Shown: positions 39,503 through 64,000 of the stretch, in pieces | Position numbering within the stretch: position 1 is the stretch's first letter | How the letters are laid out: each line of letters starts with the position of its first letter | Origin: Octopus bimaculoides | Lineage: Eukaryota | NCBI RefSeq assembly: GCF_001194135.2 | Contig: NC_069005.1 | Location: forward strand, 14,201,556-14,265,555 | DNA: 64,000 bases | Reading direction: 5' to 3' | Notes under the pieces: model-generated | What the model was told of the DNA's origin: nothing | What the model saw: the letters and a program-made list of their open reading frames with translations, nothing else | The model's database searches: none | Program-made: the position numbers and the translations under genes

Positions 39503-40054
39503 NNNNNNNNNNNNNNNNNNNNNNNNNNNNNNNNNNNNNNNNNNNNNNNNNNNNNNNNNNNNNNNNNNNNNNNNNNNNNNNNNNNNNNNNNNNNNNNNNN
39601 NNNNNNNNNNNNNNNNNNNNNNNNNNNNNNNNNNNNNNNNNNNNNNNNNNNNNNNNNNNNNNNNNNNNNNNNNNNNNNNNNNNNNNNNNNNNNNNNNNNN
39701 NNNNNNNNNNNNNNNNNNNNNNNNNNNNNNNNNNNNNNNNNNNNNNNNNNNNNNNNNNNNNNNNNNNNNNNNNNNNNNNNNNNNNNNNNNNNNNNNNNNN
39801 NNNNNNNNNNNNNNNNNNNNNNNNNNNNNNNNNNNNNNNNNNNNNNNNNNNNNNNNNNNNNNNNNNNNNNNNNNNNNNNNNNNNNNNNNNNNNNNNNNNN
39901 NNNNNNNNNNNNNNNNNNNNNNNNNNNNNNNNNNNNNNNNNNNNNNNNNNNNNNNNNNNNNNNNNNNNNNNNNNNNNNNNNNNNNNNNNNNNNNNNNNNN
40001 NNNNNNNNNNNNNNNNNNNNNNNNNNNNNNNNNNNNNNNNNNNNNNNNNNNNNN

Positions 40055-40102
<48 letters not shown>

Positions 40103-40124
40103 TAACCCATAAAGTTTGTCAGAA

Positions 40125-43100
40125 ATGTCTGCAAACAAAAAGCGTGGTGTCAGTAGCCGTGTCTCAAAGGCTGAGCAAGCACTAAAGAGCAGCAGCGGTA
40201 ATGGCAGACCAGGAAGGTTGGTGGTAGAGTCTGGAGAAGATACTCCCAAGTCAGTTGAGAAATCTTCCTCAAAGTCTAGTGAAAGCATTGGAAATCAAAC
40301 CCCAAAGACCTCTGTGAATGCTGGAAAAGTTGTTCGTAAAGCTGGACGCCCTCGAAAGCATCGGGACGGTGATGGCAGTACACCAGCGACTTCCACAGCC
40401 CTACAGAACCCTGCCACTCTTTCTACCTCTGGTCCGCTGTCATCTGTTGGTGCCAAAAAAAGAGGCCGAAAAGCCAAGAATCCCGAATCTGCAGTTTCCA
40501 CTGGGAGGAAAAAGAGTATTAATAAACGTGCCCTTGAAATTGTGGACACTTCGAAAGCAGCAATGGAGAAGTTACAAAAGAAAAAACCCAAAGGAACAAA
40601 GTTGTTGGCCACAACAAAAAGTAAAAAAATAGGGAAAGTTTACACAGAAAAGGGAATTCTTAGCAAAGTAAAGAAGGTTTGTCCAACAGAAAGCAAAGGC
40701 GCTAACAAGAAAGCTGCCAAAGAACTACAGTCTGTAAATAATAGTAAACTAAAATCTTCAACTTTGCATAAAGTTCTCAAAGGTTCTAAAACAAAGAAAT
40801 TGTTTTCAAACTCTGAAACTGATACCAGTGAAAGCAGCAAAATGCCAAAATCCAAAAAACTAGGGCACAGCAAAGACAATAGCGGGACTGGGCTTAAAAA
40901 GGTTAAGCTAAAAACTTTGATTAAGATGAAAAAATCTGGTAGTCAGCCAGGTAGGAAACGCAAAATACCTCAAGCTGAGTGTGAAGATTCTAAAAAGAAA
41001 ACCAAAGCCAAAAAAATTGTCCAAAGTACTCCGGCCATTATCTCGAAACGGAAGTGCAAAAGTAAAAAAAATGACAATCCAGAAAGTGAGAACAAAGGCC
41101 AGTTGGTGATAAAGAAAAAACCAGGTCCTGTGAAAGGAAGTAAAAAGGCTGTCCCAAAGACTTCTGCACTTGATACTAGTAGTAAAGTACAGAAACTGAA
41201 GAAATCGTTATCGGATAAATTAAAAATTAAGAAATATAAGAAAGTGAAAGATAACCTGTCTCCGCACAGACTTAGTGGCGCTGAAAATGTGGTCCAGCAA
41301 TCCAATAAGTTTGAATCAGCCGATAATAGTAGAATATGTGAAACAAAAGATATTCGCTTCTCAAAGACATCTCCACTTGAGTCAGGTACACCTACAAATG
41401 GAGCAGAAAGTTCTAGAAGACTGGTGAAAACTACACTGGACAGTCATAAATTGAATGTTCAGGGTGTCTATGAAAGTGAAATATCTGATTGTTTCAAACA
41501 AGGAGTTAATGAGGATTCTATCAACAATGTCGTAGAACTGGCTGACATGTCTAACAGTGAAGGAATCAATACTGTCTTGGTGCCGAACAAGACCAAATTC
41601 CTCAACTCTTCGGTGACTGATGTTACGGACAGCGAAGATGTAAATACACAAAGCACAATAGACAGTGAGGATGTCACTACGCGAAGTACTCTCGATAGTG
41701 AAGATGTTAATACACAGAGCACCGTGGAAAGTGATCGAGTGACTACTCCTTGTACAGTTGATAGTGAGGCAGTCAATACTCCAGGTACTGTTGATAGTGA
41801 TCAGGTTAACACACCATATACCATAGATAGTGAAGATGTAAATACTCAGAGTACTGCAGACAGTGAGAGGATCAATACTCCTTGTACAGAAGAAAGTGAA
41901 AACGCCGTTCCTCCTCTTTCTGTTGACAGTGAGGAGGTGAACACCCCTTGCAGTGTCTTCAGTGAACAGGTGAACACCCCTTGCAGTGTCCTCAGTGAAC
42001 AGGTGAATACTTCCTGCAGTGTAGATAGTACAGAGGCTGCAATGCCAAGCTCAATAGAAAGTGAACGGATTAATACACCTTGTTCGATTGATGCTGACGA
42101 TCCCAGCAGTTGTGAACTGGTAGCTTCAGATGTGAAGGCTACTCATGTTGTCAGTTCCCAGAGTCTAGAATACAACACTGTGGAATCTTCGAAAACCCCA
42201 GTTAATCTGAAGGTGGAAGATAATGTGTGTTCGAATCAGATGTTAAGTAGTCTTGAACAGAAGTCACCAGCAGCAAGTGTGGAACCATCAAGTTTACTTG
42301 ATAACCAATCCAAAGAAGTGATAAATACGGGTAGACTGAGTTCACTTCCAAACTCCGAAAGTTCTGAACAAAACCAAGCTGGCTGCCAGTCATTTCCCAA
42401 CCAGTCCAAAGTTGAAACGGATGATGACATTTATACCAAACCAGCAAGCTCTGTGGAAATGAGTCCTTTACTTTTGGAACTTTCCCCTGCTGAAAGTGAG
42501 GTAAACGTAGTTGATGATGTCGAGGTTGTTGATCCCACCAACACATCACCAATTGAACCAGATCTGTCTACAGACAATCAAACAGATCATGGCTCAGATT
42601 TGATTAGCAGTCCAGTTTCACACACGGCAAAAGCTTCCGAGCAGTTGCTGGAAATGCAACATTCTGCAGAAGAAAATCATGGAGATTGTTCTACGTTTTC
42701 AGCACTGAAGGAGAAAAATTGCGATGACTCTTCGGGGTTTACTGTTCAGGCAAAACTTGTGTCTTCAAATCCGTCAGTTGAATTAGCTTCAGATGCCACC
42801 AGTTCTATGCCAGTGTTTTCATCGACTGTTAGCAAAGATCTTCAAACAACAAATGTTGCAGCCGTATCTGTTCCCTCTGCAAAGTCTGAGGATGAAGCTT
42901 ACAGATCTAAATGCTGCACCAATGATGTTGGAAGTCTTGCAGAACCAGTGCAAAAAGACCTTGCTATTGCTACAGAAGATAGAAAAGAATCTGTGACTGA
43001 TGAAGTGTTGGAAAAGTCAGCATGTGTCAATATGCCTGGCTTGGTGTCTGTCATCTCAAGACCTTCCATTATTTCTTCAAGTAAAACAGACATTATTAAA

Positions 43101-46100
43101 CACCAGCAGCAAACTAACTCAGCTAATATACATAATTTACATGAAGATAACAAGAAACCATTTCAACCCCAGTTCCCTGTCAAAGACAAAAATATTTTTG
43201 CCTCGTTTGCTGAACTTGAACCCAAGCTTCACGAAAAGCCTCTGTCTGTAATCCGAGCAACAGCAAATCCAGAAGCTAGTGTTTCAGCTTCACTGGTGAT
43301 GGAGATGTTATCACCACCCTCATCTTCCACCTTCAAACTCTCTAACTGCACTTCTGTATTGAGCAAGATCTCGAAATGTAGCACCGATGTAGACACGTGT
43401 AGTTCTGATGTAAATAAATCAGCCACTAAAATACTGCAGGATATTTCTTCATCTGAAACTGTTCCTACCAAAATTACATCACCACCACCAGAAGCAATTT
43501 CTCATGGCTCTTCATTCTTTGAAAGTAAAATGAATTATGTAAAGGCTACGGAGACGGAGACTTCAGCTTCACTACCCAGAGCTGGTGAGGAATGCAGTAA
43601 AATCACATTGTCACACACTTATTCGAAATTTGTTGAAGATTTGCCTGATCAGAGAAACATGCTGAAAGTTATCCCCCTTGAGCAACCTTCCTCTGGTGGT
43701 GAGCCACAACCTGCTTCACAAGCAACATCATTGTCACTTGGAACTAAACTGTCAGTAAACCAAAAGGATGATCAACCTCCAGCAACTGAATTAGATTCCA
43801 CATCTGATGAACAGAAAGTTGTTGAAAGCAATTTGAATACAAAAATACAATGGCAGCCAAATGCTGTAGCCATGTCTTCTGATGCCAAAGAGTTGGACCC
43901 TAACATAGCTTCTGTGATCAAATGTAGTGACGATGCCAACAAGTCTGATCCAATTAAACTGTTCAAAGAGCAAATCATTAAGAATGTACTTCCTAACGAA
44001 GTATTTCAAATGAAGACTTTACCCAGTAAAGATAATTTGTATTCTCCTTCCAGTATTGTTGCCACTGTTGCATCTAAAATTGACTTGAGTTTGAACACTG
44101 CAGCATGCTCTGCTAGCTTTAAAGATGAACATGGTTTACCCTTGGATACAGCTTCTGTCAAACTTGATCCAGACAAGCCTATGGATAATGACATTTTCAA
44201 AGTTAATTCTGATTTACAAAAAGATACAGTTAATCTTAAAGATGATGCTGATACGCAGTCAGATTCAGCTAGTCCTAAAACAGATCCTTATATGCAATCA
44301 GATGAGGGTAGCCCTCAAGTCAACTCTAATGTGCTATCAAATGAAGATAGCCCCAAAGATGAGCCTGATACAATACTGAATGTAGATGGCTCCAAAGACG
44401 AGCCTGATACTCTATCAAATTTATATGTCCCCCGAAATGAGTCCAACACATTATCAAATGTTGATAGCCCCAAAGATGAACCCAATGCATTATCAAATAT
44501 AGAAAGTACTAGATATGAGCCTGGTGTATTATTAAATGTAGGTCACCCCAAAGTTGAGCTCAATACATTATCAGATCTAAGTATCCCTAAAGATGGACCT
44601 GATACATTGTCAAATGTAGATAGCCCTAAAGATGTACCCAATGCATTATCAAATGAAGATAGCCCCAAAGAAGAGCCTAATACATTAATAAGTATGGGTA
44701 GCCCCAAAGATGAGCCCAATATATTAATGAATATTGATAGCCACAACGTTGAACCTAGTAAATTAATAAATGTGGGTAGCCCCCAAAATGAGCCAGATAC
44801 ATTACCCAATGTAGGTAGTCCCAAAGTTGAACATGACACGTTGATAAATGTCAGTAGCCCCAATGATGAACCCACTACATTATCGAATGTAGATAGCCCC
44901 AAAGTTGAACCTGACATAGTAGTAAATGTCAGTAGCCCCCAAAATGAGAACAATACATTATCAAATATAGGTAACCCCAATGATGAGCTCAATACATCGA
45001 TAAATGTAGGTAGCCCCAATGATGAGCCCAATACAGTAATAAATGCAGGTAGCCCCAAAGGTGAGCCCAATACATTATCAGTTGGTGGAAGCCCTAGAGA
45101 TGAGTCCAATGCATTAATAAATGTTGGAAGCCCTGGAGATGAACCCAGTGCATTATCAATTGTTGGTAGCCCTAGAGACGAGTCCAATGCATTAATAAAT
45201 GTTGGTAGCCCTAGAGACGAGTCCAATGCATTAATAAATGTTGGTAGCCCTAGAGATGAGCCCAATACATTAATAACTGTAAGTAGCCCCAAAGGTGAGC
45301 CTGATAAATTATCAGTTGTTGGTAGCCCTAGAGATGAGTCCAATACATTAGTAAATCTAAGTAGTCCCAAAGATGAGCCCAATACATTATCAATTGTTGG
45401 TAGCCCTAAAGATGAGCCCGATGCATTAATAAGTGTAGGTAGCCCTACAGATGAGCCCAATACATTGTCAGTTGTTGGTAGCCCCAAAGATGGACATGAT
45501 ACATTAATCAATGCAGATAGTCCCAAAGATAAGTCCGATATATTATCAAATATAAATAGCCCCAAAGATGAGCCCAATGCAATATCAAATACAGACAGCC
45601 CCAAAGATAAGTCCAATACATTAATAAATGAAGGTAGTCTTAAAGATGTACCTGATATACAATCAGATACAACATGCCCCGAAATTGACCTCAATATGCA
45701 GTTTGATGTAACTAACTCCCAAGTTGATGCTAATATGCAATCAGATTCTGAATGTTCTATGGATGTGCAGTTGAATGCAACTAATTCCGAAGTTGATCCC
45801 AATTTGCAGTCGGACTCAGCTTGCTCTAGAGTTGAACTTGACATGCAGTTGGAAGTAACTAACCCTGCAGCTAATCCCATTATGCCACTGTCTACAGCAG
45901 AGGATTTGCCAATGGATTCAGCAGTTTCCAAAGCTGATGGTGGCTCTCAGTTGACTATGACTGCTGTTGTTAAAGTCAATTCTGCTACTTATCAAGACAA
46001 ATGCAGTCCTGACGAGAAGTCAGATGTTATTGACAACACAAACACTCCTCCTTCTGCATCTTGTGAGCCATCTTCCCCTGTGGTTGCTTCAGAGAATAAA

Positions 46101-49100
46101 TCTTTTCAGCAGAATCAGTCTCCGGTCGCTGGAGATGAAGCAGAGCAGTTCATCAAAACATCAAAGCCTTCGGATCAATGCCAACCATGTGAAGTGAATG
46201 ATAGTCCTCAGTCCTCTTCATTATTTCCACCTCATCAAACTTCATCATCGTCATCATCAGTATCATCTGTAATACTTCCATCATCATCATCATCATCCTC
46301 ATCCTCCTCCTCATCATCATCATCCTCATCGGCATTGTCATTATCATTGCCATCAACATCATCATCAGAGCTACTGTCTCATGAACAATTACCTAGCTTA
46401 GCTCTATCAGATATGCCTTCTCAAGAACAGAAACTACCATTGGTTATAAGGTTTAATGATTCATCTAATACATGTGATGTGAAAAATGACGAGGAGAAAG
46501 GGAAACCTAGTGTCAAGGCAGAGGTAACCAGTGTGGTGGCAGAGAAGACGTACGTAGAAACGAAGGTCAGTGAAGAAAATGCAGTTAGTTCTGTAGAGTC
46601 TTTAAATGACTCAAACCTAAATGGCATTCCTGACACTATAGGCAATGGCAATGAACCTCCTCCTGGTATCAAGACTTCCAGCCTTGATCCTTCATCAAAT
46701 CTCAGCTGTAGTAGTGATAGTAGTAATAGTAACAGCAAGACGTCTGCTATGGGGACTGTTACTTCATCATCTATGGCCAGTCCATCATTGTCTAAATCTG
46801 ATGAGGCTTCTGTGATACATAGTGAAACCTCCTCCGATAGTGCAGTACCTTCCTATAAAAAGAACCCTGGTGCCTTGATACAAAATCCAACAAACACAAC
46901 AGAATCTTTGGCTGCATTTTCTTTGAATTCTGCCCCAGTTAAAAAGGAGAGTCTTACTGTCCCCACTATCAAGATAAAAGTCGAGTCTGAAGCAACTCCA
47001 TCAGACACTTTGTCCCATTTGTCAACCTCCATGGTGATAGCTCCTGCCGCTGCTCAAAGAATTCTCTCGTTAGCAACTCTGGCCAACAAAGTCACTCTGA
47101 AATCCAGCCATGCCACACCAGCCATTAAGAAATCAAAATCAGTAGATTCTGAAAGTGGCAGTTTGTTACTGAAAGGAGAGGCAGATGGTAACCTGGTGGA
47201 AAGTGAAGATAACAGTGAAAGTGTGGATGAAAGAGTTACCGGTTCAAAGAGCAGTGCTCCAGCTCCCCATAGGGTTGTGAGTGGAGATTTAACCGACCAT
47301 TCGAAGAAGGCTACAGTTGCCATTCCTTCAGATAAAGTTCCTGAAAGAGATGTTTCTGGCTCATCAACATCTACAGAATCTCCAAACATTGAGAAGCCTC
47401 TACTTAGCAAAGATGAGGAAAAACTCTCCAGTGTTGAATTAGGGAAAACCCCTACAGCTACCGACTTGGACAAAGGCTCTGCAGAAAACACTAACAACAG
47501 TTGCCTGAAATCTCCAAACTCCACTTCTAACTCGCAGCTTGTTTGTGATCCTTCTCTGAAAGAGAAGGACAGTGAAGAGCAAAGAAAAGGTTCTAGTTGT
47601 CAGGTTACTGTTGACCTGTCCGTCTCGGTCAGCATCGAGCCCCCTCCTACTCCTTATCCTCCCCTCTCCATATCTCCAAAGGCATCTCATAAGAACATAG
47701 AGATAAACGAGAGAACTGAAATGAGGTCATCCCCCCCTGATGATAAATCCAGCTCCTTAGCTGCAGTTAAAAAGCCAGATGTGGAAATAGTCAAACCACA
47801 GCTGAAGCCATCATTTGCTATCTTTGACAGCTGCCTTGTGTGCATAATTTGCCGGAAGATGTGCAAAAGTAAGAAATCTTTCCAGGCACATGTGTGGTGG
47901 CATTTTCATGCTTGTAGTCGGATGTGCACCCATTGTCTGCCTCCTCCAGAACCCATCAGTATTAATAACCAACACAAACTTCAGCTGAATAAGTGCCCTT
48001 ATGTGATGGATGTTATGGTTAAAATATGTCGCACTCTTAAAAAGATACGTCAGGCAAAGCTGCAGTCTGGCAAAGACCAGGTTGAGCGTGAAAAAACATT
48101 TGCAGAGGAGGAAACTGACACCGAGAGCGTGGATCTAGACTACGACTTGAACAACGGTGGTAGTGGTGGCGGTGGGGAAAACAGTAGCAGCAAGATGGCG
48201 GATCTGTCACTGACCGCAGCACAAGTTGACAGCAGCCAGTCAAACAACCAGAAATCCAATGCAACCGATGACAACAGTATATTTGCTCCAGCAAACGTTG
48301 AGTATCTCAGGTCTCTCTACTCCAGTGGTAGTAACAGCAAAAAACGGACTAAAAAGTCTTCTTCCAGTGGCCCGAACCACCACCACCACCACCACCATCA
48401 CCACCACCACCACCATAGTTCGTCCTCGTCGTCTTCTTCGTCCACCTCCTCATCTGTGGTAAACTCTTCAGTGTCGTCTTCCCACAAGAAAGGGGGTTTC
48501 TATGTCTGCGGTTTTCAGTACTGTACTTACTCCTGTATGAATTGTCTTCAGTTCCGTCTGCATCTACAGCAGTGTCATAACTTTGAAACTGTGTTTCCTT
48601 GCTACCATTGTGGCCAGCTGAACTATTCAAAAGATGACCTCATCAAACACATGTACAATCATTCAAATGCGCGAGATTTTCTGCTATTTCGATGTTGGTT
48701 CCCTCGGTGTCGATTTGGTACAAACATGCTTCAGGAGTTTCACGAACACAACAACATCTTCCATGTCGGTGAGTTAGTGTTTACCTGCTTCTATTGCAAT
48801 ACGGAGTTCCCCGAACTATCTGAACTGCTCAACCATCTCCAGTCTAATTTGCTGAAATTTGTACAATGTCCTCACTGCACTGTGAAGGACCGAAACCGAA
48901 GGACTGTTTTGAACCACATATCTACCGAACACCCACTGAAACCAAAGCAAATTGTGGTCACCTGCCAAGTTGTATGCAAAAAGAAGCAAACTGTCTCCCC
49001 TGATGCTAGTGAGATACTGCACAATCAGCATCTTAAACTAAACCAGTCTCTGTCCGAAGAACGAATACTGGAATGTATTAAATGTGGCCTGATCTGTCGT

Positions 49101-51424
49101 AACATAGCAACATTACGGAAACACTCCCGCGTCTGCCTCCGAGACGCTCTTTCTAAGAAAACATTCAGCTCACCAAGAGAGAACAATTTAACTATGATCT
49201 ACTCTTGTCAATGGTGTAGTTTCCCAGCAGCCTCTGATACAATGCTTTTCCAGCACACTGTTGACCAGCATCCGGGCAAGAATGCCAATTTTGAGCAGAT
49301 TGAGCTGAAGGCACTTGACTCAGGATATGGTGAATATGAAAACCTCTCTAGAATGTCGTCTTGGCTCGAAACAACCAAGAGCGAAGCTATCATCTGCCCT
49401 TACTGCAAAGTTGGCTTTGATGATGAACTCCAGTGGAGTGAACACATGGAGCATGAACACAACCACGAAGAGCATATAGTCAAAGAAGAAGATGATGATG
49501 ATGACGACGATGAGGATGGCCATTTATCAAAGTACCGATGTGATTTTTGTGAATTTAACGGTATTTCTGAAAAGGATCTCTTAGATCACCAGCAAATGAT
49601 GACTATATCCGAGGGTCCTGACGGGCTGCATAGAAGGGTTGTTGACCTCGCAAATGTAACACCAAAAGTGACAATGTTAACGGACACCAAGTTAACTGTG
49701 AGTAACGTTCAGTCATTCAAGAAGTTCAAGAGGTCACCAAGTAAAAAGATGAACAATGCATTCTTTAAGTGTTCTGGCTGCCACTTCCGGAGCTTGAGCA
49801 AGTGGCAATCATTGCGACACGTGAAGCATTGTTCCCTTGCAAAGCGACGCCTCTCAGAATATATGAAGAAAAGAGGGTCATTCGTAAGCCGAGATGAAGT
49901 GAAGGCAGATATGGACATATACAATTTCCCAGAAAGCAACTCTGGATCATCGTCTTCGTCGTCTGAGCGACTGAGTTTCACTGCCGCCAGTAGTGATGAG
50001 CTACGCAATCAAAAGAGTTCTCGAATGATGTCATACATGCGGGACAAACAGATGAACCTGATGGCCAAGGAAGGTATTATCGACTGCACAGACAGCGAGG
50101 GATACAAGTGTTCAATTTGTAAACATACTGGCAAAACAATGATAAACATTCGGCAGCATCTGTGGAAGACTCATCTGAAACTAAAACCCGTTCGTTGTCC
50201 TTGCTGTCCATTCACGTCCTGGAAGAACTACACCCTGGAAAAGCACAAGATCAGCAAGCATCATCATTCGCATCCCAACCTCTCTGATCAAGAGATGAAA
50301 TCGCTGGCTCAGAATCTCCAAGGAACCACTGATGGTCTCGTTGAATGTCAGCTCTGTTTCTACAAGAGCCCCAGTCCATATAAAGTACGAACACACCTCT
50401 GGCGAACGCACATGCACCTTGAAATGAAACAGTGTAGGTCCTGCTCTTATAAGTGTTGGTATTGGTACTTAATGAACATGCATCGACTGTCACGACACAA
50501 AATAAAGGTAGACCAGAATAGCACGAAATATCAGCAGCAGCAACAGCAGAAGAGTCAAAACGAAAACAAAAATATGCTCGAAGGTAATGGTGAATCCAAA
50601 ACCAATGACAAAAATTCGTGTAAATCAAATGATGGTGACAATGCTGTAATGTCTGACGAAGACATGAGTCAACTAGCTAAAGAGTTGATGGAGCGAAAGA
50701 CTGATAATAAATACGAATGCACTATATGTAAATATGAATGCACACGCATTATGATAATGAAAATTCATATCTGGAAGCGCCATTTGAATGTAAAACAACG
50801 CAAATGCCAATATTGTCCGTACACTTGCTGGCTAGAAACGCGTTTGGCTCAACATGTATGTCGGATTGTAGTAGCCAGTTCTTGTGATGTTAACTCCGAT
50901 GGTGGCGGCGGTGGTGATGGTGGTGCCACAGGGCCAATACAGGACTCCAAATCTCGGTGGGTGATTTCAAAAGCAGATGAACATGGTTGCAAGTTATACA
51001 TTAATAAATCAAAGCGTCCACACAAAAGACTATCGTTTGAAGAGTTCGGAAGGCCGTGTCCAAAGAAATTCCGATCACTTTCCGAAGGCGGGGCTGCCAA
51101 TGGGAGTGCTGATAACAGTGTTGATGGCTTAGATGACTCTGAGAATACCTCGAGTTTTACTGCCACCTCAACTGTGGCAACTTTTGTCAAGGGAAGTAAG
51201 AACTTTTCTTGGATCCGACAGAAGCATGAGAAGTCTGTTTCTCAATCTTTCTTCCGCGTTAATGACAAAAAACTTTTTGCACGCACCACAGACCGTTTGA
51301 ACCAGTTGGAAATTTATACGTGTGTTTTCTGTAGCTATAAGTCCTGGAATATGGAGGCAATGTGTCACCATACTTACAAACATAAGCTACAGTGTGGTTA
51401 CTGCTTGTTCAGAGCCTACAGCCG
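40125..51424 (+). CDS. Giant coding exon of a very large multi-zinc-finger nuclear protein (AT-hook/Lys-rich N-terminus, two tandem peptide-repeat arrays, poly-Ser, poly-His, ~19 C2H2/C2HC fingers); continues into a downstream exon
   Basis: Stop-free frame of ~11.3 kb. First ATG at 40125 (MSANKKR), just after a possible acceptor TTTGTCAG (AG 40121-40122). Ends at consensus donor CG|GTAAGT (GT 51425-51426, phase 2) in the middle of a finger (LQCGYCLFRAYSR). Many C-x2/4-C-x12-H-x3/4-H/C motifs between 47841 and 51424. Confidence 0.93.
41628..42089 (+). repeat. Coding tandem repeat, 14 x 33 bp (11 aa, consensus DSE[D/Q]VNTP[C/S][T/S]V)
   Basis: Units read from the translation: DSEDVNTQSTI, DSEDVTTRSTL, DSEDVNTQSTV, ESDRVTTPCTV ... 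ESERINTPCSI; the span is exactly 14x33 nt. Confidence 0.92.
44271..45635 (+). repeat. Coding tandem repeat, 35 x 39 bp (13 aa, consensus SP[K/R]DEPN[T/A]L[S/I]NVG), with more diverged units continuing to ~45870
   Basis: Units from SPKTDPYMQSDEG to SPKDKSNTLINEG keep exact 13-aa register; SPRDESNALINVG occurs three times identically at the protein level. Confidence 0.95.
46241..46367 (+). repeat. Coding (TCA/TCC)n poly-serine tract
   Basis: TSSSSSSVSSVILPSSSSSSSSSSSSSSSSSALSLSLPSTSSS in frame. Confidence 0.9.
48378..48416 (+). repeat. Coding (CAC/CAT)13 poly-histidine tract flanked by poly-Ser
   Basis: 13 consecutive His codons in frame. Confidence 0.95.
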
Positions 51425-54400
51425 GTAAGTAAAACGTTTTAGCTTGTTTTAATTTAATCAATACATCTCTCACTTTCTCTCTCTAATTTTGCACAGCAAT
51501 CTAGTTATACGCTTTAGTTACTGAACCTTACCTTTGACAGCTATATGTTGTTTTCAAACATTTATGCACATATGTTTAACCCATTAGCATTCAGATTATT
51601 TTGTCAAATATGTTTATTCACATTGTTTTGAATTAATCATGCAATTATCTTGTAGCTTTGACTGTTTGATGGTGTGATTGTTTATTTTTTGAATGTAGCA
51701 TTGATGCAAGAGGCAGGATCTGGCCAGTTTGAACAGAAAAAAAACTGGTAGAATATTCTAGATATAGCTGGTTTTAAATTCTCTAACCCTTTGGCATTTG
51801 TATTATTTTGTCAAAAGTAATTCTTATTTATTCACATTGTTTTGAATTAATCATGCATTATCTTGTAACTTTGAGATTTTGATGAGGTAACTGTTTAGAA
51901 TGACATTGTTGGGTTAGTGTGAGAAGCCAGATCTGGCCAGTTTGAACATAAGAGGCAGAATATTTGGGCTGGGTATGGCCAGTTTAAATGCTAAAAGGTA
52001 GTTCAAAGAAATGACCATTACTATATTCTCTTGACCATTTGTCATGTTCTCCTTAAATTAGTGCAATAAATGAATCGATTGCTTGGCTTATGATAAATGG
52101 TCCCAATTGTGTTTAGTTGAAGGAGAAATGGGAATTGTGGGCACACATGCCTATCCCAGAGGCATTAGCAATATAAGTGAAATAATTTTCACTGTGATGA
52201 GAAACAAGATGGTACTCATTTTTACTAGCAGATGATGTCCTGTACAGCACATAAGCAAGCTACTATTAACTTGTTTGGATGAAGAGAAGCTAAGCCATCG
52301 ACTTTTACGGCTCAACTGGGGTCCATATAAGATTTTGTTGTTAAAATTTATACGTAGTAAATTAATTGTACTTCTACAATAAACAAAATATTTTCACAAT
52401 TCTTTTATGCAATTCCTAATAATATTTAATCATAAAAATATAGTGGGATTTTCTAGACATTGAATAATTATGAGGGATTCCACTCTACTTCCTGAGTGAA
52501 ATCGGAATCAAAGAAGCCAAAAATAGTTAAGAACTACTGCTTTAACCCTTTAGCATTCGGAGTATTCTGTCACATGTAATGCTTTTTCATTCACGTTGTG
52601 TTTAAGTAATCATGCTTTATCTCATAGCTTTGAAATTTTGATGATGTGATTGTATATTTTTAGAGTAGCATTGAAAGGTAAGTGTGATAAGCTGCATCTG
52701 ACTGGTTAGAACATAAAACAGGAAACCTATTTGGGCCAGATGTGGCTCAGGTTAAATAAATGTGGGTCGGGTGGGAATATAGAAGCTGTAAAAGAAACTT
52801 GTTGAAGCGGCAGCACATCTTGTTGGGTATTTGTTGAAACATGTGAGTGAAATGTTGCCAATTTGATGATATTGATTGAGTCTGGTTTCTATCAGCCTGT
52901 TTGATACCAGCCCATTTGAAACTGCCTCTAAGTTCTGTGATAAACACTTTCTGTTTTAATGTGATCTCAAACCTTTCATCAAAGTTTCATATTTATGTTC
53001 CAAACATCAACTTAGTAATGACAAGAATTTTCAAAATTAATTGTAATAGTGAAGCCAGTGCAAGTCAATAGAAATATGATAACTAGTGCCAAAAAATATC
53101 TTTACTAACATTAGCAAAACCAGTGGGTTTTCTATGCTATTCCTTGTGTAAACCCAATTTACAGTTTAGAAATAACTAACATTAATTGTATGGCTTTTAA
53201 ACATCTTGTTGTCTCCCTTTATGCGCTGAGTTTCTTTCAGTGATGTGTTTCCTTGGGCCACCAGACACTGATGTATGGCTTCAGTACTGTTTAACTGATC
53301 TAAGATGAATCTATTCCTGGATAGGATACCAGCCTATAGCAAGTAACATCCTCAGACAAACTTGTAGCAATTCCTGACGGCTATAAGGTCTATAGAATTC
53401 TTGTGCTATGTTCAGAAACACAACTAAGTTTTTGTATCTATTATGATTTGTCTTACACCTAGTCACTTGACCAATGTGTTTACACAACCCTTAAATAACA
53501 ATTTCTTTAACCAAACATGAAATAGGGTTAGATTGACCACACAGTAGAACTAAAACTCACAGTCCAGGAACAAATCATCTTGTATTTTATTCATCCATTT
53601 TCCTCTTTCACATTGTCATCATTGTCATTTGACATCCACTCTTCCATGCTTGCACAGGTCAGAGTTTCTTTTTTTTCTTCTTCTTTGAGACAGCTTTTCT
53701 ATGGCCAGATGCTCTTCCTGTTGCTAACCTCACCTGTTCCCAAACCTGATAATATTTCCTCGTGGAAGACTGGAAACAAACATCACCAGTTGTTTGTTGG
53801 TGATACACTTTTACGATCATAAAATGATGTCACGGCAAGATCATACACACACACACATACATAATGAGCTTCTTCCAGATTCCATCAACTAGATGCATTC
53901 ACAAGGACATGGGACCCTGACAGGTGCTACTAATCTGCATCAGAGTAGACCTGGGAAAAATAGTGGCTAAGAAACAGACCCACATACCTCAAAACCTTAG
54001 AACTTCTGACACCAGTGCCCCACTACCAGATGCAGTTTAAAACCATACCCAATAGACTTAATTGTTAATGCTAAGTGACTAGTGAGTTATGGTTGTAGAA
54101 GTGAAATAGCACAAATGGAATAATGGCTACTTTGAGGTGCAATTAGAAGCATGGTCATCTTGCAAGTGATGGATATGGAATTCAAATTCTCTCAATGGTT
54201 CTGTTCTTTTTTTGTCTCTAGTTTGTAATTTATAATATCTGAGAAAAGACTTCTCTGTACCCTGTCAACATCAAGTACTGCATCCATTTCATTCTTAATA
54301 TCCCAGTTTGTATGGTTGTAAGTAGATACCAGAGAGTAAATTCATTCAACTCTACAGCTTGTGAGTGACATAAACAACCGTTTTATTAGTTTTAGGTTCT

Positions 54401-54548: not shown

Positions 54549-55835
54549 TTAGGTTGTCAAGAAAGTTCTTGCAGTTTTTAACTTTCAAATTCAGATCCAC
54601 ATATCTTGGCTCAAACAAAGCTTTATTAATTGAAATAAACACCATCAGGATCAACCCACTTTTGCCAACACGAAACAAGTTTATTTACGCCAGTCGCATA
54701 AAGATCTTGCATTCTGGTGGCGATGAAGTCATTGAAAGCGTGTTTGGCATCGTCTTAGTTTTTGAAGCATTTCTCATGCAGGAAGTTGTCGAGATGCTTG
54801 AAAAAGTGGTAGTCAGTAGGCAAGAGGTCTGGTGAGTATGGCGGATGAGGCAGAGTTTCGTAGCCCAATTCATTCAACTTCTGCAGGGTCAGTTGTGCGA
54901 TATGCAACCGAGCGTTGTCGTGGAGAAGAATTGGTCCTTTTCTATTGACTAATGCTGGCTGTTGTCGGATTTTCCTATGCATTTCATCCATTTGCTGACA
55001 GTACTTCGCCATAGTGGTTTCGCCTGGATCCAAAAAGCTTTGATGGATGAGACCGGCCGCAGACCACCAAACAGTTGCCATTACCTTCTTTTGGAGCAAC
55101 TTTGGCTTCGGGAAGTGCCGTGGGGCTTCATCAGTGTCCAACCACTGAGCTGAGTGTCGCCAGTTGTCGTAAAGAATCCACTTTTCATCGCAAGTCACAA
55201 TCCGGTCAAGAAACGGGTTGTTCTTGTTGTGTAAAAGAAGGGAAGACGACACTNNNNNNNNNNNNNNNNNNNNNNNNNNNNNNNNNNNNNNNNNNCGTGT
55301 GGCACCCATTTCTCAAGTATTTTTGTTTATCCAATCTCTTTCAAGTGGTTCGAAATTATCGTGTACATTACGTTTAATTCAGAAGCAAGCTCTTGAACAG
55401 TTGTGCGTGGATTGGCTTCCACTAAGGCTCGTAGTTGATTGTTGTCAACATCTGATGGCCGACCACTACCCTTATCATTTTCAAGACTCTTGTCACCGCT
55501 ACGGAATTTCTTGAACCACCATTGTGCTGTTCGTTCATTAGTGGTTCCTGGGCCAAATGCATTGTTGATATCACAAGCTGTTTCAGCAGCTTTTTGGCCT
55601 AGCTTGAACTGGAATAAAAAAATTGTGTAAATTTGCTTTTTGTCCATGTTGTATTCAACGTTCCTGAAAAAATGGCCTAATTACTCAAAAAGAAAAAGAG
55701 TAACACGATTAGGTAGAGCGAAAAACGGCTTTAAAATGATATATACAGTCAAAGTAATTTAGTGAAAATTAATTTGAAAATACATCATTTAAAACCAAAA
55801 TTAAAAATTCTGCAAGAACTTTCTTGACAACCTCA
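54549..55835 (-). mobile_element. Full-length but defective mariner (DD34D, Hsmar1/cecropia-like) DNA transposon
   Basis: TIRs TTAGGTTGTCAAGAAAGTTCTTGCAG (54549) and CTGCAAGAACTTTCTTGACAACCTCA (ends 55835), TA on both sides, ~1.29 kb long including a gap. Confidence 0.95.
54626..55647 (-). pseudogene. Mariner transposase pseudogene
   Basis: MDKKQIYTIFLFQFK...WVPH...TCDEKW...HDNAR...[13 protein letters not shown]...VYFN-stop. In-frame nonsense codons at 55327-55329 and 54755-54757, small in-frame deletions, and a 42-N gap. Confidence 0.92.
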
Positions 55836-57374: not shown

Positions 57375-57751
57375 TTTACTCTTTACTCTTTTACTTGTTT
57401 CAGTCATTTGACTGCGGCCATGCTGGAGCACCGCCTTTAGTCGAGCAAATCAACCCCAGGACTTATTCTTTGGAAGCCTAGTATTTATTCTATCGGTTCT
57501 TTTTGCCGAACCGCTAAGTTACGGCGACGTAAACACACCACCATCGGTTGTCAAGCGATGGTGGGGGGACAAACATATACATATATACGACGGGCTTCTT
57601 TCAGTTTCCGTCTACCAAATCCACTCACAAGGTTTTGGTCGGCCCGAGGCTATAGTAGAAGACACTTGCCCAAGGTGCCATGCAATGGGACTGAACCCGG
57701 AACCGTGTGGTTGGTAAGCGAGCTACTTACCACACAGCCACTCCTGCGCCT
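57375..57751 (-). mobile_element. Young tRNA-derived SINE of a second family (head AGGCGCAGGAGTGGCTGTGTGGTAAG, CORE-like CCTTGGGCAAGTGTCTT, tail GAAACAAGTAAAAGAGTAAA)
   Basis: Complete copy with A/B-box-like head on the minus strand and CpGs retained. Confidence 0.85.
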
Positions 57752-58619
57752 TGTTTGTTGACTTTTTTTTACTACTATACATATTCATCTGATAAGAGAG
57801 AAGAAGGCATTTTGACTTTGAACTCTTGATTTTCCATAATTCGATTCGCCAAAAATAAACAGTCTTTTACGTCTAGACACCCTATGGGAAAGAAAATATA
57901 ATTTTAAGTAACGGAGAAAAAGAAATCTGTAGAAATACAGTCGGTTAGATGGTTCCAGGGAGATAACTCTGTAGCTTCTAACTTACTTTAATTAGCTTAG
58001 AAATGTGATGACGGATTCTGGTGCATTCTATAGTTTAAATTTGATAGCTTTGGATGTTATTTAAATGGCTAGTATGGTTCTTCCACGGAGTAATTACTTC
58101 AGTTTCAACACATTGTCCCAGGTCAAATCACTTGCCAGACAAGTACAACTCCGAAATTAGGAAATGTATTTCTGATCATTCGAGATACTTCGAAGTCATT
58201 TTTCATGACGCCTTCTCCAAAAGTGTGCTTTCGTCAATAACTAAAACTAGCGATATTGAAAGAATGTGGCGTTAACTTGTGAAACGACAATTAACTAATG
58301 CAGTTGTGGTTACGTAGGCGGAGTGTGCATATTAAATGTTGCCTTTCATATTATTTCTGATTGCACTCGGCAATGTTTATTCCCACAACCGAAACAAACG
58401 TGTTTTTAAGACAATCGTCCTCGATACGTCCCTCGACTGCCCTTACAACCAAAATCCATTACCCCCAAGTAGTATAACAATAATGAATTGCCATCGGCCA
58501 GTTTAAAAAAGCATTTATTAATCAAATAGGGCGAATATCTTGACAAGGGAAGCAACTCTTGGTTGGTTTGTAGATTACCCCCCCTCTCTCTGATTTATTA
58601 CTGTATGTACTACATATAC

Positions 58620-58810
58620 TCTTTTACTTGTTTTAGTCATTAGACTGCGGCCATGCTGGAGCACCGCCTTTAGTCGAGCAAATCGACCCCCAGGACTTAT
58701 TCTTTGTAAGCCTAGTACTTATTCTATCGGTTCTTTGGCCGAACCGCCAAGTTACGGGGATGTAAACACACCACCATCTGTTCTCAAGCGATGTTGGTGG
58801 GACAAACACA

Positions 58811-58858
<48 letters not shown>

Positions 58859-59117
58859 CGACGGGCTTCTTTCAGTTTACGTCTACCCAATCCGCTCACA
58901 AGGTTTTGGTCGCTCCGAGGCTAGAGTAGAAGACACTTGCCCGAGGTGCTACGCAGTGGGACTGAANNNNNNNNNNTTAGTCGAGCAAATCGACCCCCAG
59001 GACTTATTCTTTGTAAGCCTAGTACTTATTCTATCGGTTCTTTGGCCGAACCGCCAAGTTACGGGGATGTAAACACACCACCATCTGTTCTCAAGCGATG
59101 TTGGTGGGACAAACACA

Positions 59118-59165
<48 letters not shown>

Positions 59166-59331
59166 CGACGGGCTTCTTTCAGTTTACGTCTACCCAATCC
59201 GCTCACAAGGTTTTGGTCGCTCCGAGGCTAGAGTAGAAGACACTTGCCCGAGGTGCTACGCAGTGGGACTGAACCCGGAACCAAGTGGTTGGTAAGCGAG
59301 CTACTTACCCACACAGCCACTCCTGCGCCTA
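58620..59331 (-). mobile_element. Second-family SINE, one copy represented twice across a 10-N gap
   Basis: 58670-58966 and 58977-59273 are identical 297-bp stretches; the head is completed at 59331. Confidence 0.85.
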
Positions 59332-60400: not shown

Positions 60401-60704
60401 CAATCCTCAACTGCCCCTTACAGCCAAAATCCATTACTCCCAAGTGGTTTGCCTGCAAAAAAAACAATAAAATAAAAAAAAATTGAAATAAATAAAACCA
60501 ATGACATCGGCCAATTAAAAAAACTTTTGCGTTTATAAGTGACGTAGCATGTATCTCTTGACAAGGGATGCAACTCTTTATTGTGTTTGTATATATTATC
60601 TTTTCCTCTTTCTCTTCTCCCCAGCACTCGGTCTTTCTCTGTGGTTTGTTACTGCAAGCCTCTTTGTACTCAACTGACTAATAACAGGCAACACCAGAAC
60701 ATTT

Positions 60705-60876
60705 TATCTTTTATCTGGTTCAGTCATTAGACAAGGTAGTGCCCCATGCTGAAGAATTGACCCCAGTACTTTTTTTAAAGCCTAGTACTTATTCTCTTTC
60801 TTTTGTCAAACTAAGTTATGTGAACGTAAACAAACCAACACCGTTTGTCGAGCAGTGGTGGGGAGCAAAGACATAC

Positions 60877-60914
<38 letters not shown>

Positions 60915-61052
60915 GACAGGCTTCTTTCAGTTTGTCTACCAAATCGTTTCATAGTGCTATAGTAGAAGACACTTGCTCAAGATTCCTTGGGATGGGACTG
61001 AACCTGGCACCATGTGGTCGGGAAGCAAGCTTCATATCGCACAACCACGCTG
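60705..61052 (-). mobile_element. Older, degenerate copy of the second SINE family
   Basis: AAGCCTAGTACTTATTCT...ACGACAGGCTTCTTTCAGTTT...AGTAGAAGACACTTGCTCAAG motifs. Confidence 0.75.
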
Positions 61053-61519
61053 CTTTGAAAAGACAAAATAGAATTTACATTTGTATAATTCTTTTCTTTG
61101 CCATTGTGTTGGACAAAATAACTTAATTCTTAAAATTCTCATAAACATGGAAAACTTTATTAAGCCTTTGCTTGCATAATTAATTGTATCCTTCTTATAA
61201 CAGTATTAACGAGCAGGACCTGTGAATATTGCATGGAATTAATGGTAAACCTATTGGGTTATTCCTGAAAGCATTATCCAAAAATCCTGAAAGCGTAGCC
61301 TCTCTTGTATCTGTACAGATAGATAGTCGCTCATCTGCTACTCGTTGAAAAGTGAAAGAAATTGGAATACGATGATTACTTAATGCACTTTATATACTTT
61401 ATGCACAATTTTATAATAAATATTCACTCTTATTTTCCCATTTATAAGCCAAGGCAATAGATACACCTTTCAATTTGTGTACACCTTTCAATCCAATACT
61501 TCTTTGCAGACAACGTTCT

Positions 61520-63820: not shown

Positions 63821-63898
63821 ATATATGTATAAAATGTTTCTATTTCTTGACTAATGTTTGCTCTGCACTAATCCTTTGTTTTTTTTCTCTTTGAATAG

Positions 63899-63983
63899 GA
63901 AGAAGATTGCTGATCATATTGATGAATTCCATCAAGCGCCACTGAAGATTGTTGTAGATAAAAACTTCAAGAAATATCAAATG
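63899..63983 (+). CDS. Next coding exon of the same zinc-finger gene; completes the split C2H2 finger (R-KKIADHIDEFHQAPLKIVVDKNFKKYQM...)
   Basis: Branch-like CTAAT (63851 and 63868), polypyrimidine tract CCTTTGTTTTTTTTCTCTTT, AG at 63897-63898. Phase-2 joining with 51424 gives CGYC-LFRAYSRKKIAD-H-IDEF-H (exact x12 spacing). The frame is open to the window end. The 3' boundary is uncertain (possible donor ATG|GTATTT after 63983). Confidence 0.85.
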
Positions 63984-64000
63984 GTATTTCCTTCATTGGG

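What the first reader, a model, noticed from the sequence alone, without database searches (positions are those of the whole stretch)
50030..50875. Three copies of an unusual Trp-containing double zinc-finger module with a conserved helical leader
Seen: (1) RDKQMNLMAKEG..YKCSICKHTGKTMINIRQHLWKTH-LKLKPVR-CPCCPFTSWKNYTLEKHKISKH; (2) SDQEMKSLAQNL..VECQLCFYKSPSPYKVRTHLWRTH-MHLEMKQ-CRSCSYKCWYWYLMNMHRLSRH; (3) SDEDMSQLAKEL..YECTICKYECTRIMIMKIHIWKRH-LNVKQRK-CQYCPYTCWLETRLAQH. All three share H-[LI]-W-x2-H in finger 1, a 7-residue linker, C-x2-C-x-[FY]-x2-W in finger 2, and an upstream D-x2-M-x2-[LM]-A motif. Established: paired Trp residues pack adjacent fingers into one unit in tandem CWCH2 (Zic/Gli) proteins, but there the Trp lies between the cysteines. 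Inference: a distinct fused two-finger fold, possibly for protein or RNA binding.
Basis: partly seen in the sequence, partly recalled or inferred. Interest (0 to 1): 0.7.

Follow-up and report, generated by a model that had tools for sequence, protein, structure and literature searches.

The report
Trp-clamped double zinc-finger module, cephalopod
Three copies of an 80-residue unit (a short helix followed by two classical zinc fingers carrying tryptophans where neighbouring fingers normally touch) sit in a giant, uncharacterised cephalopod zinc-finger gene; the unit is real and conserved but is a lineage-specific variation on ordinary C2H2 fingers, not a new kind of domain.

Summary
Window 50031-50875 lies in an 11.3-kb coding exon (40125-51425, + strand) of a eukaryotic gene whose closest relative is an Argonauta hians hypothetical protein. 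It encodes three copies of: leader (D-x2-M-x2-[LM]-A), finger 1 (C-x2-C-x12-H-[LI]-W-x2-H), a 7-residue linker, and finger 2 (C-x2-C-x-[FY]-x2-W...).

The module is not a chance pattern. It recurs with both Trp, the same spacing and a related leader in paralogous giant C2H2 proteins of Octopus and Sepia. It is 88-97% identical to A. hians with no indels, while the spacers diverge. No Pfam family reaches threshold.

Both fingers are classical C2H2 fingers (CTCF-like by sequence, predicted beta-beta-alpha fold), and the 7-residue linker is the canonical length. The two Trp fall on helix position 9 of finger 1 and position -2 of finger 2. These are the known "boundary residue pair" through which adjacent fingers touch.

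AlphaFold2 predicts a helix-strand extension plus two fingers (pLDDT 86-90, pTM 0.70-0.71). I had no coordinates, so Trp burial was not measured. It is not a tCWCH2 (Zic/Gli) motif.

Verdict: a new variant of a known kind, of moderate interest. Function is unknown; I favour a rigid two-finger nucleic-acid-binding unit.

The parts
40125..51425 (+). Giant coding exon of an uncharacterised multi-C2H2 zinc-finger gene. It runs from the ATG at 40125 to the donor AGCCG|GTAAGT at 51425/51426.
   Evidence: ORF 40116-51428. tblastn of A. hians P0001 places its residue 1 at nt 40125 and its residues 2769-4065 at 47799-51425. Start and donor read directly.
63900..63986 (+). Next exon, after a ~12.5-kb intron. 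It completes the split finger CGYCLFRAYSR|KKIADHIDEFH. The exon end at 63986 is my reading of a GT donor.
   Evidence: Acceptor ...tttgaatag|GAAGAAG read. P0001 residues 4055-4099 align to 63855-63998.
50031..50108 (+). Module 1 leader (SYMRDKQMNLMAKEGIIDCTDSEGYK). Motif DKQMNLMA is at 50043-50066.
   Evidence: AF2 predicts helix at residues 5-15 and strand at 16-18.
50109..50174 (+). Module 1 finger 1, CSICKHTGKTMINIRQHLWKTH (C-x2-C-x12-H-x4-H). The Trp at helix position 9 is encoded at 50163-50165.
50175..50195 (+). Module 1 linker LKLKPVR: 7 residues, with K-P at the TGEKP positions.
   Evidence: alignment to CTCF.
50196..50261 (+). Module 1 finger 2, CPCCPFTSWKNYTLEKHKISKH. The Trp at position -2 is encoded at 50220-50222.
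50274..50345 (+). Module 2 leader (PNLSDQEMKSLAQNLQGTTDGLVE). The motif starts at 50286.
50346..50498 (+). Module 2: finger 1 CQLCFYKSPSPYKVRTHLWRTH, linker MHLEMKQ, finger 2 CRSCSYKCWYWYLMNMHRLSRH. Trp codons are at 50400 and 50457.
   Evidence: 97% identical to A. hians.
50643..50717 (+). Module 3 leader (AVMSDEDMSQLAKELMERKTDNKYE). The motif starts at 50655.
50718..50870 (+). Module 3: finger 1 CTICKYECTRIMIMKIHIWKRH, linker LNVKQRK, finger 2 CQYCPYTCWLETRLAQHVCRIV. The fourth zinc ligand is missing at canonical spacing. Trp codons are at 50772 and 50829.
51321..51425 (+). Fourth finger pair: CVFCSYKSWNMEAMCHHTYKH-KLQ-CGYCLFRAYSR..., completed in the next exon. Its first finger also has C-x2-C-x-Y-x2-W.
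48507..48932 (+). Four-finger block that is the most widely conserved part of the family across Lophotrochozoa. It gives the family context and is not part of the Trp modules.
   Evidence: Best-matching stretch (query residues ~200-385) in most of the 150 hits. Finger map.

Best explanation
The three modules are specialised pairs of classical C2H2 zinc fingers inside a giant, probably nuclear, multi-finger protein of an octopod cephalopod.

Shown:
- Each module is about 80 residues: a short helix plus beta-strand leader, then two beta-beta-alpha fingers.
- Both fingers have H-x4-H spacing, and the core aromatic sits at position -5 instead of -3.
- The fingers are joined by a canonical-length (7-residue), hydrophobic, non-TGEKP linker.
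- The conserved Trp occupy helix position 9 of finger 1 and position -2 of finger 2.

Inferred:
- These two positions are the boundary residue pair that normally forms the Arg-to-Ser/Thr contact between adjacent fingers. Replacing them with Trp/Trp turns a weak polar contact into a hydrophobic clamp. Together with the hydrophobic linker residues, this fixes the two fingers in one orientation.
- Finger 1 lacks the canonical Phe. The amphipathic leader packs on finger 1 and adds a third strand to its sheet, as in SWI5 finger 1.
- The result is a rigid two-finger unit.

Inferred with lower confidence:
- In this gene the unit was triplicated. With net charge +8 to +10 per pair, and AT-hook-like motifs at the N-terminus, it most likely contacts nucleic acid (DNA first, RNA second) in a non-canonical geometry.
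- In the less basic paralogues, a hydrophobic residue at position -1 of finger 2 (Phe) suggests a protein-contact surface instead.
For: - Ligand spacing and Trp register were read from the sequence.
- Positions 9 and -2 are the interacting boundary pair of adjacent fingers (PMC7293014).
- Among 1304 tandem finger pairs in the 150 representative proteins, Trp is 0.8% at position 9 and 0.9% at -2. The W/W combination occurs 7 times against about 0.1 expected; 6 of the 7 are in this cephalopod family, and the seventh (P0097) has different spacing (H-x3-H, 6-residue linker).
- The module is present with both Trp, a 7-residue linker and a leader in A. hians (3 copies), Octopus vulgaris, Sepia, O. 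bimaculoides and P0005 (one copy each), at only 18-34% identity between lineages.
- Octopus versus Sepia: 95% identical.
- Window versus A. hians: modules 88-97% identical with no indels, spacers 57-83% identical and rich in indels.
- AF2 gives pLDDT 86.5 / pTM 0.70 (module 1) and 90.4 / 0.71 (Octopus module), with the same helix-strand-finger-finger topology.
- SWI5 ZF1 has an N-terminal strand-plus-helix extension (PMC7614390). Tramtrack 2drp gives the highest target-normalised TM-score for module 1 and is near the top for the Octopus module.
Against: - No coordinates were available, so a W-W contact, Trp burial and leader packing were never measured.
- pTM of about 0.7 and high linker pLDDT are also seen for ordinary tandem fingers.
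- Paralogue C (P0064, P0059) has Arg at position 9 with Trp at -2, so the Trp pair is dispensable.
- The W/W co-occurrence is phylogenetically non-independent and may go back to one ancestral module.
- Leader amphipathicity is significant in only some copies.
- Base-contact positions (-1, 2, 3, 6) are variable and often hydrophobic, which argues against canonical DNA reading.
- Module 3 finger 2 lacks a normal fourth ligand.
- No expression or binding data exist.
Confidence: 0.5

Rival explanations
1. These are ordinary tandem C2H2 fingers. The two Trp are lineage-specific substitutions with no special structural role, and the fingers are flexibly linked until they bind DNA in the usual way.
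For: Ligand spacing and linker length are canonical. The best sequence matches are CTCF fingers. Foldseek finds only generic tandem-finger structures. Position 9 is Arg in paralogue C. Finger pairs preceded by a conserved leader are common in other giant zinc-finger proteins, for example 27 pairs in the Amphiura protein P0046.
Against: Both Trp are retained through divergence to 18-34% identity, where otherwise almost only the zinc ligands are invariant. Trp is below 1% at either position in 1304 background pairs, yet the two co-occur. Position -1 of finger 2 is Phe, Tyr or Leu in most copies, which is atypical for base contact.
Confidence: 0.25
2. The module is a protein-protein interaction unit, a docking surface in a giant scaffold, and not a nucleic-acid binder.
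For: The recognition-helix positions are hydrophobic in several copies: Octopus L,T,C,C / F,N,G,A; window module 2 finger 2 Y,Y,L,M. Paralogues B and C have near-neutral finger pairs, +1 to +3. The fused tCWCH2 units are proposed to have roles other than direct DNA binding (PMC2837044).
Against: The window's three pairs and the Octopus/Sepia pair carry +7 to +10 net charge in 54 residues. The linker keeps the DNA-binding length. The protein has AT-hook-like motifs.
Confidence: 0.2
3. The module is a divergent member of the tandem CWCH2 (Zic/Gli/Zap1) class.
For: It has two Trp in two adjacent fingers, no TGEKP linker, and a compact AF2 model.
Against: The published tCWCH2 pattern (C-x-W between the cysteines in both fingers) matches nowhere in the ORF or in the 150 relatives. 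The linker is 7 residues against 11.8 +/- 4.4. GLI, ZIC3 and Zap1 structures are not among the top 50 Foldseek hits.
Confidence: 0.03
4. The reading frame is not a real gene: a chance ORF, a pseudogene, or repeat-derived sequence.
For: The gene is unannotated as far as these tools show. The N-terminal two-thirds is low-complexity, with coding tandem repeats.
Against: The ORF is open for 11.3 kb in DNA of 39-45% GC. It has a full-length orthologue in A. hians with the same exon junction. Conservation follows the domain-versus-spacer pattern expected under purifying selection. 592 relatives score E<=0.001.
Confidence: 0.02

Closest known systems
Classical (TFIIIA/Kruppel-type) tandem C2H2 zinc fingers, e.g. 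CTCF ZF3-7
   Same: C-x2-C-x12-H-x3-5-H ligands, a hydrophobic residue at helix position 4, predicted beta-beta-alpha fold, and a 7-residue His-to-Cys linker. phmmer E=1.7e-9 to CTCF.
   Different: H-x4-H in both fingers. The aromatic is at -5 instead of -3. The linker is hydrophobic and non-TGEKP. The boundary positions 9/-2 carry Trp/Trp instead of Arg/Ser-Thr. There is a conserved N-terminal helix-strand leader. All Pfam C2H2 models score below their gathering threshold.
Boundary residue pair (positions 9 and -2) of adjacent C2H2 fingers (PMC7293014)
   Same: The two conserved Trp fall exactly on these two positions, which interact and set inter-finger geometry.
   Different: The pairs described there are mostly R/K with S/T/A. 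W/W was not among the modes tested in that paper as far as I read. In 1304 local pairs it occurs essentially only in this family.
Tandem CWCH2 motif of Zic/Gli/Glis/Zap1/PacC (PMC2837044)
   Same: One Trp per finger in two adjacent fingers, proposed to hold them together. No TGEKP linker.
   Different: There the Trp lies between the two Cys (C-x-W-...-C), the linker is longer (11.8 +/- 4.4 aa), and insertions are frequent. The published pattern is not matched here. The Trp are in a different part of each finger, so any packing must use a different interface.
SWI5 finger 1 (PDB 1ncs) and Tramtrack finger 1 (PDB 2drp): fingers with an N-terminal structural extension
   Same: An extra N-terminal helix and/or beta-strand adds to the finger's sheet (PMC7614390). 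AF2 predicts helix plus strand before finger 1 in two modules. 2drp gives the highest target-normalised TM-score for module 1 and is near the top for the Octopus module (0.48-0.50).
   Different: No detectable sequence relationship. TM-scores are below 0.5 when normalised by the query. In SWI5 the adjacent fingers are structurally independent.
ZNF462 / ZNF142 finger families in Pfam (PF23225, PF23075, PF23223, PF23612)
   Same: Giant proteins with dispersed pairs of C2H2 fingers. These families give the best, but weak, Pfam hits to several fingers of this protein.
   Different: All hits are below the gathering score (8-25 bits against 27). None covers the leader or the two-finger unit. No orthology was shown.
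Uncharacterised lophotrochozoan giant C2H2 proteins (A. hians GAB1608034.1; O. vulgaris CAI9740727.1, labelled 'serine-rich adhesin for platelets-like'; O. sinensis LOC115224503 and LOC115224524; O. bimaculoides LOC106882551; bivalve, gastropod, Lingula and Lineus proteins)
   Same: True homologues: same order of solitary HxWxH finger, four-finger block, finger pairs and C-terminal fingers.
   Different: Only the Argonauta-type gene has three Trp modules; the other cephalopod genes have one. Outside cephalopods I did not find the W/W module among the 150 representatives.

Membership tests
Classical C2H2 zinc finger | Ligand pattern C-x2-4-C-x12-H-x3-5-H | tested here: met
   Five of the six fingers match. 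Module 3 finger 2 has C-x2-C-x12-H but no His or Cys at +3 to +5 (HVCRIV), in both Argonauta-type sequences.
Classical C2H2 zinc finger | Beta-beta-alpha fold | tested here: met
   The AF2 secondary structure shows a hairpin plus a 12-residue helix for each finger, at pLDDT 86-90. This is a prediction, not an experiment.
Classical C2H2 zinc finger | Conserved hydrophobic core: Phe at -3 and Leu at +4 | tested here: inconclusive
   Position +4 is hydrophobic in nearly all fingers (Cys in finger 1 of P0005 and O. bimaculoides). Position -3 is G/S/C/T, and -5 is aromatic (F/Y) in finger 2 but H/Y/Q/L in finger 1. I recall this variant as the 'aromatic swap' of ZFY-type fingers, from memory; a paper search found no usable source.
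Classical C2H2 zinc finger | Pfam zf-C2H2 family models reach their gathering score | tested here: not met
   Best generic hits: PF13465 at 14.6 bits (cut-off 40), PF13894 at 12 bits (27), PF12756 at 15 bits (26.9). PF00096 is not listed.
Tandem CWCH2 (Zic/Gli/Zap1) | Trp between the two Cys of each of two adjacent fingers (the PHI-BLAST pattern of PMC2837044) | tested here: not met
   The regex of the published pattern gives no match in the 3770-aa ORF or in the 150 relatives.
Tandem CWCH2 (Zic/Gli/Zap1) | Elongated, variable linker (11.8 +/- 4.4 aa) without TGEKP | tested here: not met
   The linker is invariably 7 residues in all 10 modules. TGEKP is absent, but the length is canonical.
Tandem CWCH2 (Zic/Gli/Zap1) | The two fingers share one hydrophobic core centred on the two Trp | not testable with these tools
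   Model coordinates were not returned. Only pTM 0.70-0.71 is available.
ZNF462-type fingers (Pfam PF23225, PF23075, PF23223, PF23077) | Score at or above the gathering threshold (25-27 bits) | tested here: not met
   8.5-24.5 bits.
C2H2 finger with N-terminal extension (SWI5 ZF1 / Tramtrack ZF1 type) | An extra N-terminal helix and/or strand packing on the finger sheet | tested here: inconclusive
   AF2 predicts helix 5-15 plus strand 16-18 (module 1), and helix 3-14 plus strand 18-21 (Octopus module). Foldseek to 2drp gives TMt 0.48-0.50. Packing contacts were not inspected.
Lophotrochozoan giant C2H2 protein family (unnamed) | Significant full-length homology and shared finger order | tested here: met
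   P0001 scores 2254 bits at 85% identity, and P0002-P0032 score E<1e-30. Finger maps are collinear.

The most novel reading that the evidence does not exclude
The leader plus Trp/Trp double finger is an autonomous 80-residue domain, not two beads on a string. In it the leader helix, the hydrophobic linker and the two boundary-position Trp form a single core. This would be a second, independently evolved solution, distinct from tCWCH2, for fusing two C2H2 fingers. It would be used for a non-canonical ligand: RNA, protein, or DNA read in an unusual geometry.
Probability: 0.2. Interest if true: 0.55.

Novelty: new variant of a known kind. Interest (0 to 1): 0.35.

Why it matters
If the Trp/Trp pair at positions 9 and -2 does lock two fingers together, it would be a natural example of how the inter-finger boundary, known to tune DNA-binding geometry, can be hard-wired hydrophobically. 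That would interest people who study or engineer zinc-finger arrays. It would also give a first structural handle on a large, wholly uncharacterised family of giant lophotrochozoan zinc-finger proteins. If the Trp turn out to be incidental, this is one more lineage-specific decoration of the commonest metazoan DNA-binding domain.

Tried and rejected
1. The search for homologous proteins was run three times: on the 482-aa C-terminal region, on the 10-module alignment, and on the four-finger block. It returned nothing each time, although the 85%-identical A. hians protein is in the collection. I treat these as tool misses, not as absence of relatives.
2. Pfam scan of the 2575-aa N-terminal part: no family.
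3. Pfam scan of four relatives: only sub-threshold ZNF462 and SUZ12 finger hits.
4. A DNA-level repeat search across the modules found only short chance matches, so recent duplication is rejected.
5. None are stored.
6. tblastn of all 150 relatives against the window found no second family member in the 64 kb, although A. hians has a paralogue annotated under the next locus tag.
7. ZNF462 orthology was considered because of the Pfam hits, and was not adopted: all scores are below threshold, and two literature searches were unhelpful.
8. A literature search for 'aromatic swap' fingers gave no usable source. That comparison rests on my memory only.
9. The intron hypothesis for AQH|GTATGT in module 3 was rejected. 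The frame stays open for another 190 codons, and that stretch is conserved in A. hians.
Full report
**What the window is.** Base composition is about 26-45% GC in 2-kb bins. The window contains N gaps, microsatellites and GT-AG introns, so it is eukaryotic. The finding lies in one very long open frame, 40116-51428 on the + strand. The A. hians protein P0001 aligns from its residue 1 at the ATG at 40125. The frame ends at a consensus donor, AGCCG|GTAAGT, at 51425/51426. About 12.5 kb downstream, an acceptor at 63899/63900 continues the frame and completes a split finger, CGYCLFRAYSR|KKIADHIDEFH.

**Checking the observation.** Each copy consists of:
- a leader with D-x2-M-x2-[LM]-A;
- a finger C-x2-C-x12-H-[LI]-W-x2-H;
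- a 7-residue linker;
- a finger beginning C-x2-C-x-[FY]-x2-W.

Each motif is expected fewer than 0.01 times in shuffles of the zinc-finger region. The copies are 25-32% identical to each other and share no DNA repeat. In the third copy the second finger has no fourth ligand at normal spacing (AQHVCRIV). This is conserved in the closest relative, so it is not a sequencing error.

**Relatives.**
- An exhaustive HMMER search with residues 2576-3770 found 592 proteins at E<=0.001.
- The best hit is a 4364-aa hypothetical protein of Argonauta hians, 85% identical over the matched stretches.
- The next hits, at 27-37% identity, are giant uncharacterised proteins: Octopus vulgaris and O. sinensis, a cluster containing a cuttlefish (Acanthosepion/Sepia pharaonis) protein, O. 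bimaculoides, bivalves, gastropods, the brachiopod Lingula and the nemertean Lineus.
- The most widely conserved part is a four-finger block at about 48507-48932, not the Trp modules.
- The order of fingers is collinear among the cephalopod genes.
- I cannot name the species of the window. It is an octopod-like cephalopod whose closest available relative is A. hians.

**Is the module conserved?** Yes.
- The full pattern (both Trp, H-x4-H, 7-residue linker) occurs three times in A. hians.
- It occurs once each in O. vulgaris (P0002), the cuttlefish cluster (P0003), P0005 and O. bimaculoides (P0008), always preceded by a related leader such as SKDEEMKAMARKII.
- A third paralogue lineage (O. sinensis LOC115224524 and P0059) keeps the finger-2 Trp but has Arg in finger 1, as HIRMHH and HIRVDH.
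- Across the ten aligned modules only seven zinc ligands and the finger-2 Trp are invariant. Identity between lineages is 18-34%.
- Octopus and cuttlefish modules are 95% identical.
- Against A. hians the three modules are 94%, 97% and 88% identical with no internal indels. The spacers are 57-83% identical and full of indels. This is the signature of purifying selection on the whole unit, leader included.

**Is it a known family?**
- No Pfam model reaches its gathering score on the modules, on the rest of the protein, or on four relatives. The best are sub-threshold hits to ZNF462- and ZNF142-specific finger models and to generic C2H2 models.
- By sequence against the PDB, the modules resemble CTCF fingers (E=1.7e-9), with the linker aligned to TGxxP linkers. 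The fingers are therefore classical C2H2 fingers.
Its published pattern matches nowhere in this protein or in the 150 relatives.

**Where the Trp sit.** I count from the first His as helix position 7.
- The finger-1 Trp (H-L-W) is position 9.
- In finger 2 (C-P-C-C-P-F-T-S-W-K-N-Y-T-L-E-K-H) the Trp is position -2.
- These are the two positions that interact between adjacent fingers and set their mutual geometry, the 'boundary residue pair', usually Arg with Ser/Thr/Ala (PMC7293014).
- In 1304 tandem finger pairs from the 150 representative proteins, Arg (45%) and Lys (13%) dominate position 9. Trp is 0.8% at position 9 and 0.9% at -2.
- W/W occurs seven times against about 0.1 expected, six of them in this family. 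These occurrences are not phylogenetically independent. Their retention through deep divergence is the stronger argument.
- Paralogue C has the canonical Arg at position 9 opposite the Trp. This fits the view that the same interface is being used.

**Predicted structure.**
- AlphaFold2 with the 10-module alignment gave pLDDT 86.5 and pTM 0.70 for window module 1. It gave pLDDT 90.4 and pTM 0.71 for the Octopus module (all five models 88-90).
- Both have the same topology: helix, short strand pairing with the first finger's hairpin, finger, linker, finger.
- Foldseek against the PDB found only generic tandem C2H2 structures (CTCF, Kaiso, Tramtrack, HKR3, ZFAT). Query-normalised TM-scores were at most 0.49, and no hit had E<=0.001.
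- GLI, ZIC3 and Zap1 were not in the top 50.
- Tramtrack (2drp), whose first finger I recall as having an extra strand (from memory), gave target-normalised TM-scores of 0.48-0.50, the highest for module 1 and near the top for the Octopus module. SWI5 finger 1 is a documented precedent for an N-terminal strand-plus-helix extension (PMC7614390).

**Function.**
- Shown: the finger pairs of the window's three modules carry net charge +8 to +10, and the Octopus/cuttlefish pair +7. The leaders are neutral to acidic.
- Shown: the N-terminus has AT-hook-like GRP motifs.
- Against canonical DNA reading: positions -1, 2, 3 and 6 are variable and often hydrophobic, and position -1 of finger 2 is Phe in three paralogue lineages.
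- I therefore favour a rigid two-finger unit that binds nucleic acid in a non-canonical way, and I keep protein binding as a serious rival.
- Every functional statement here is inference.

**Verdict.** The module is a conserved, so far unannotated, specialised double C2H2 finger with an N-terminal extension and a Trp/Trp boundary pair. It is a new variant of a known kind in an uncharacterised cephalopod gene family. It is not a new fold and not a tCWCH2 member.

Noticed in passing
window 44335-45648; 41627-42022; 46242-46367; 48376-48415: Coding tandem repeats in the giant exon. A 39-nt unit repeats about 34 times (13-aa repeats of the SPKDEPNTLSNVG type). 33/66-nt units encode 11-aa DSEDVNTQST-type repeats. 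There is also a long poly-Ser and a poly-His run.
   Followed up: partly
window ~40125-47800: The N-terminal two-thirds of the protein is low-complexity, has no Pfam hit, and is only about 42-44% identical to A. hians, against 77% for the zinc-finger region. It contains AT-hook-like motifs, e.g. KAGRPRKHR.
   Followed up: partly
window ~50950-51095: A ~49-residue block (SKSRWVISKADEHGCKLYINKSKRPHKRLSFEEFGRPCPKKFRSLSEGG) is 100% identical to A. hians although its flanks are indel-rich. It is basic and may be a nuclear-localisation or docking motif.
   Followed up: no
window 47841-47909: The solitary finger CIICRKMCKSKKSFQAHVWWHFH is conserved in 1-4 copies in all cephalopod paralogues as H-[LIV]-[WLM]-W-H-x-H or H-L-W-T-H. 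This is a second Trp-bearing finger type in the family.
   Followed up: partly
window 54755-55309 (- strand): A fragment of a mariner-type transposase (Pfam PF01359, E=1.9e-23) lies inside the 12.5-kb intron, next to an N gap.
   Followed up: partly
window 57412-57714, 58594-59292, 60685-61123: Several copies of a dispersed, SINE-like repeat lie in the intron, each ending in CA/TA microsatellites. Their translations share ...SRANRPPGLILCKPSTYSIGSLAEPPSYGDVNTPPSV....
   Followed up: no
window ~40040-40054, ~55260, ~58970, ~62370-63000: Assembly gaps (runs of N). One ends about 70 nt upstream of the start codon, just before an (AT)n microsatellite, so any 5' UTR or upstream exon cannot be read.
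   Followed up: no
P0046 (Amphiura filiformis XP_072013384.1), whole protein: This echinoderm protein carries about 26-27 dispersed two-finger pairs. Each pair is preceded by a conserved ~20-residue leader (...P-S-x-x-E-K-x-L...TG-x-Y-x-C), has TGEKP linkers and lacks the Trp. This shows that 'leader plus finger pair' modules are a wider architecture.
   Followed up: partly
tool behaviour: The word-indexed protein search missed an 85%-identical protein that the collection demonstrably holds.
   Followed up: yes
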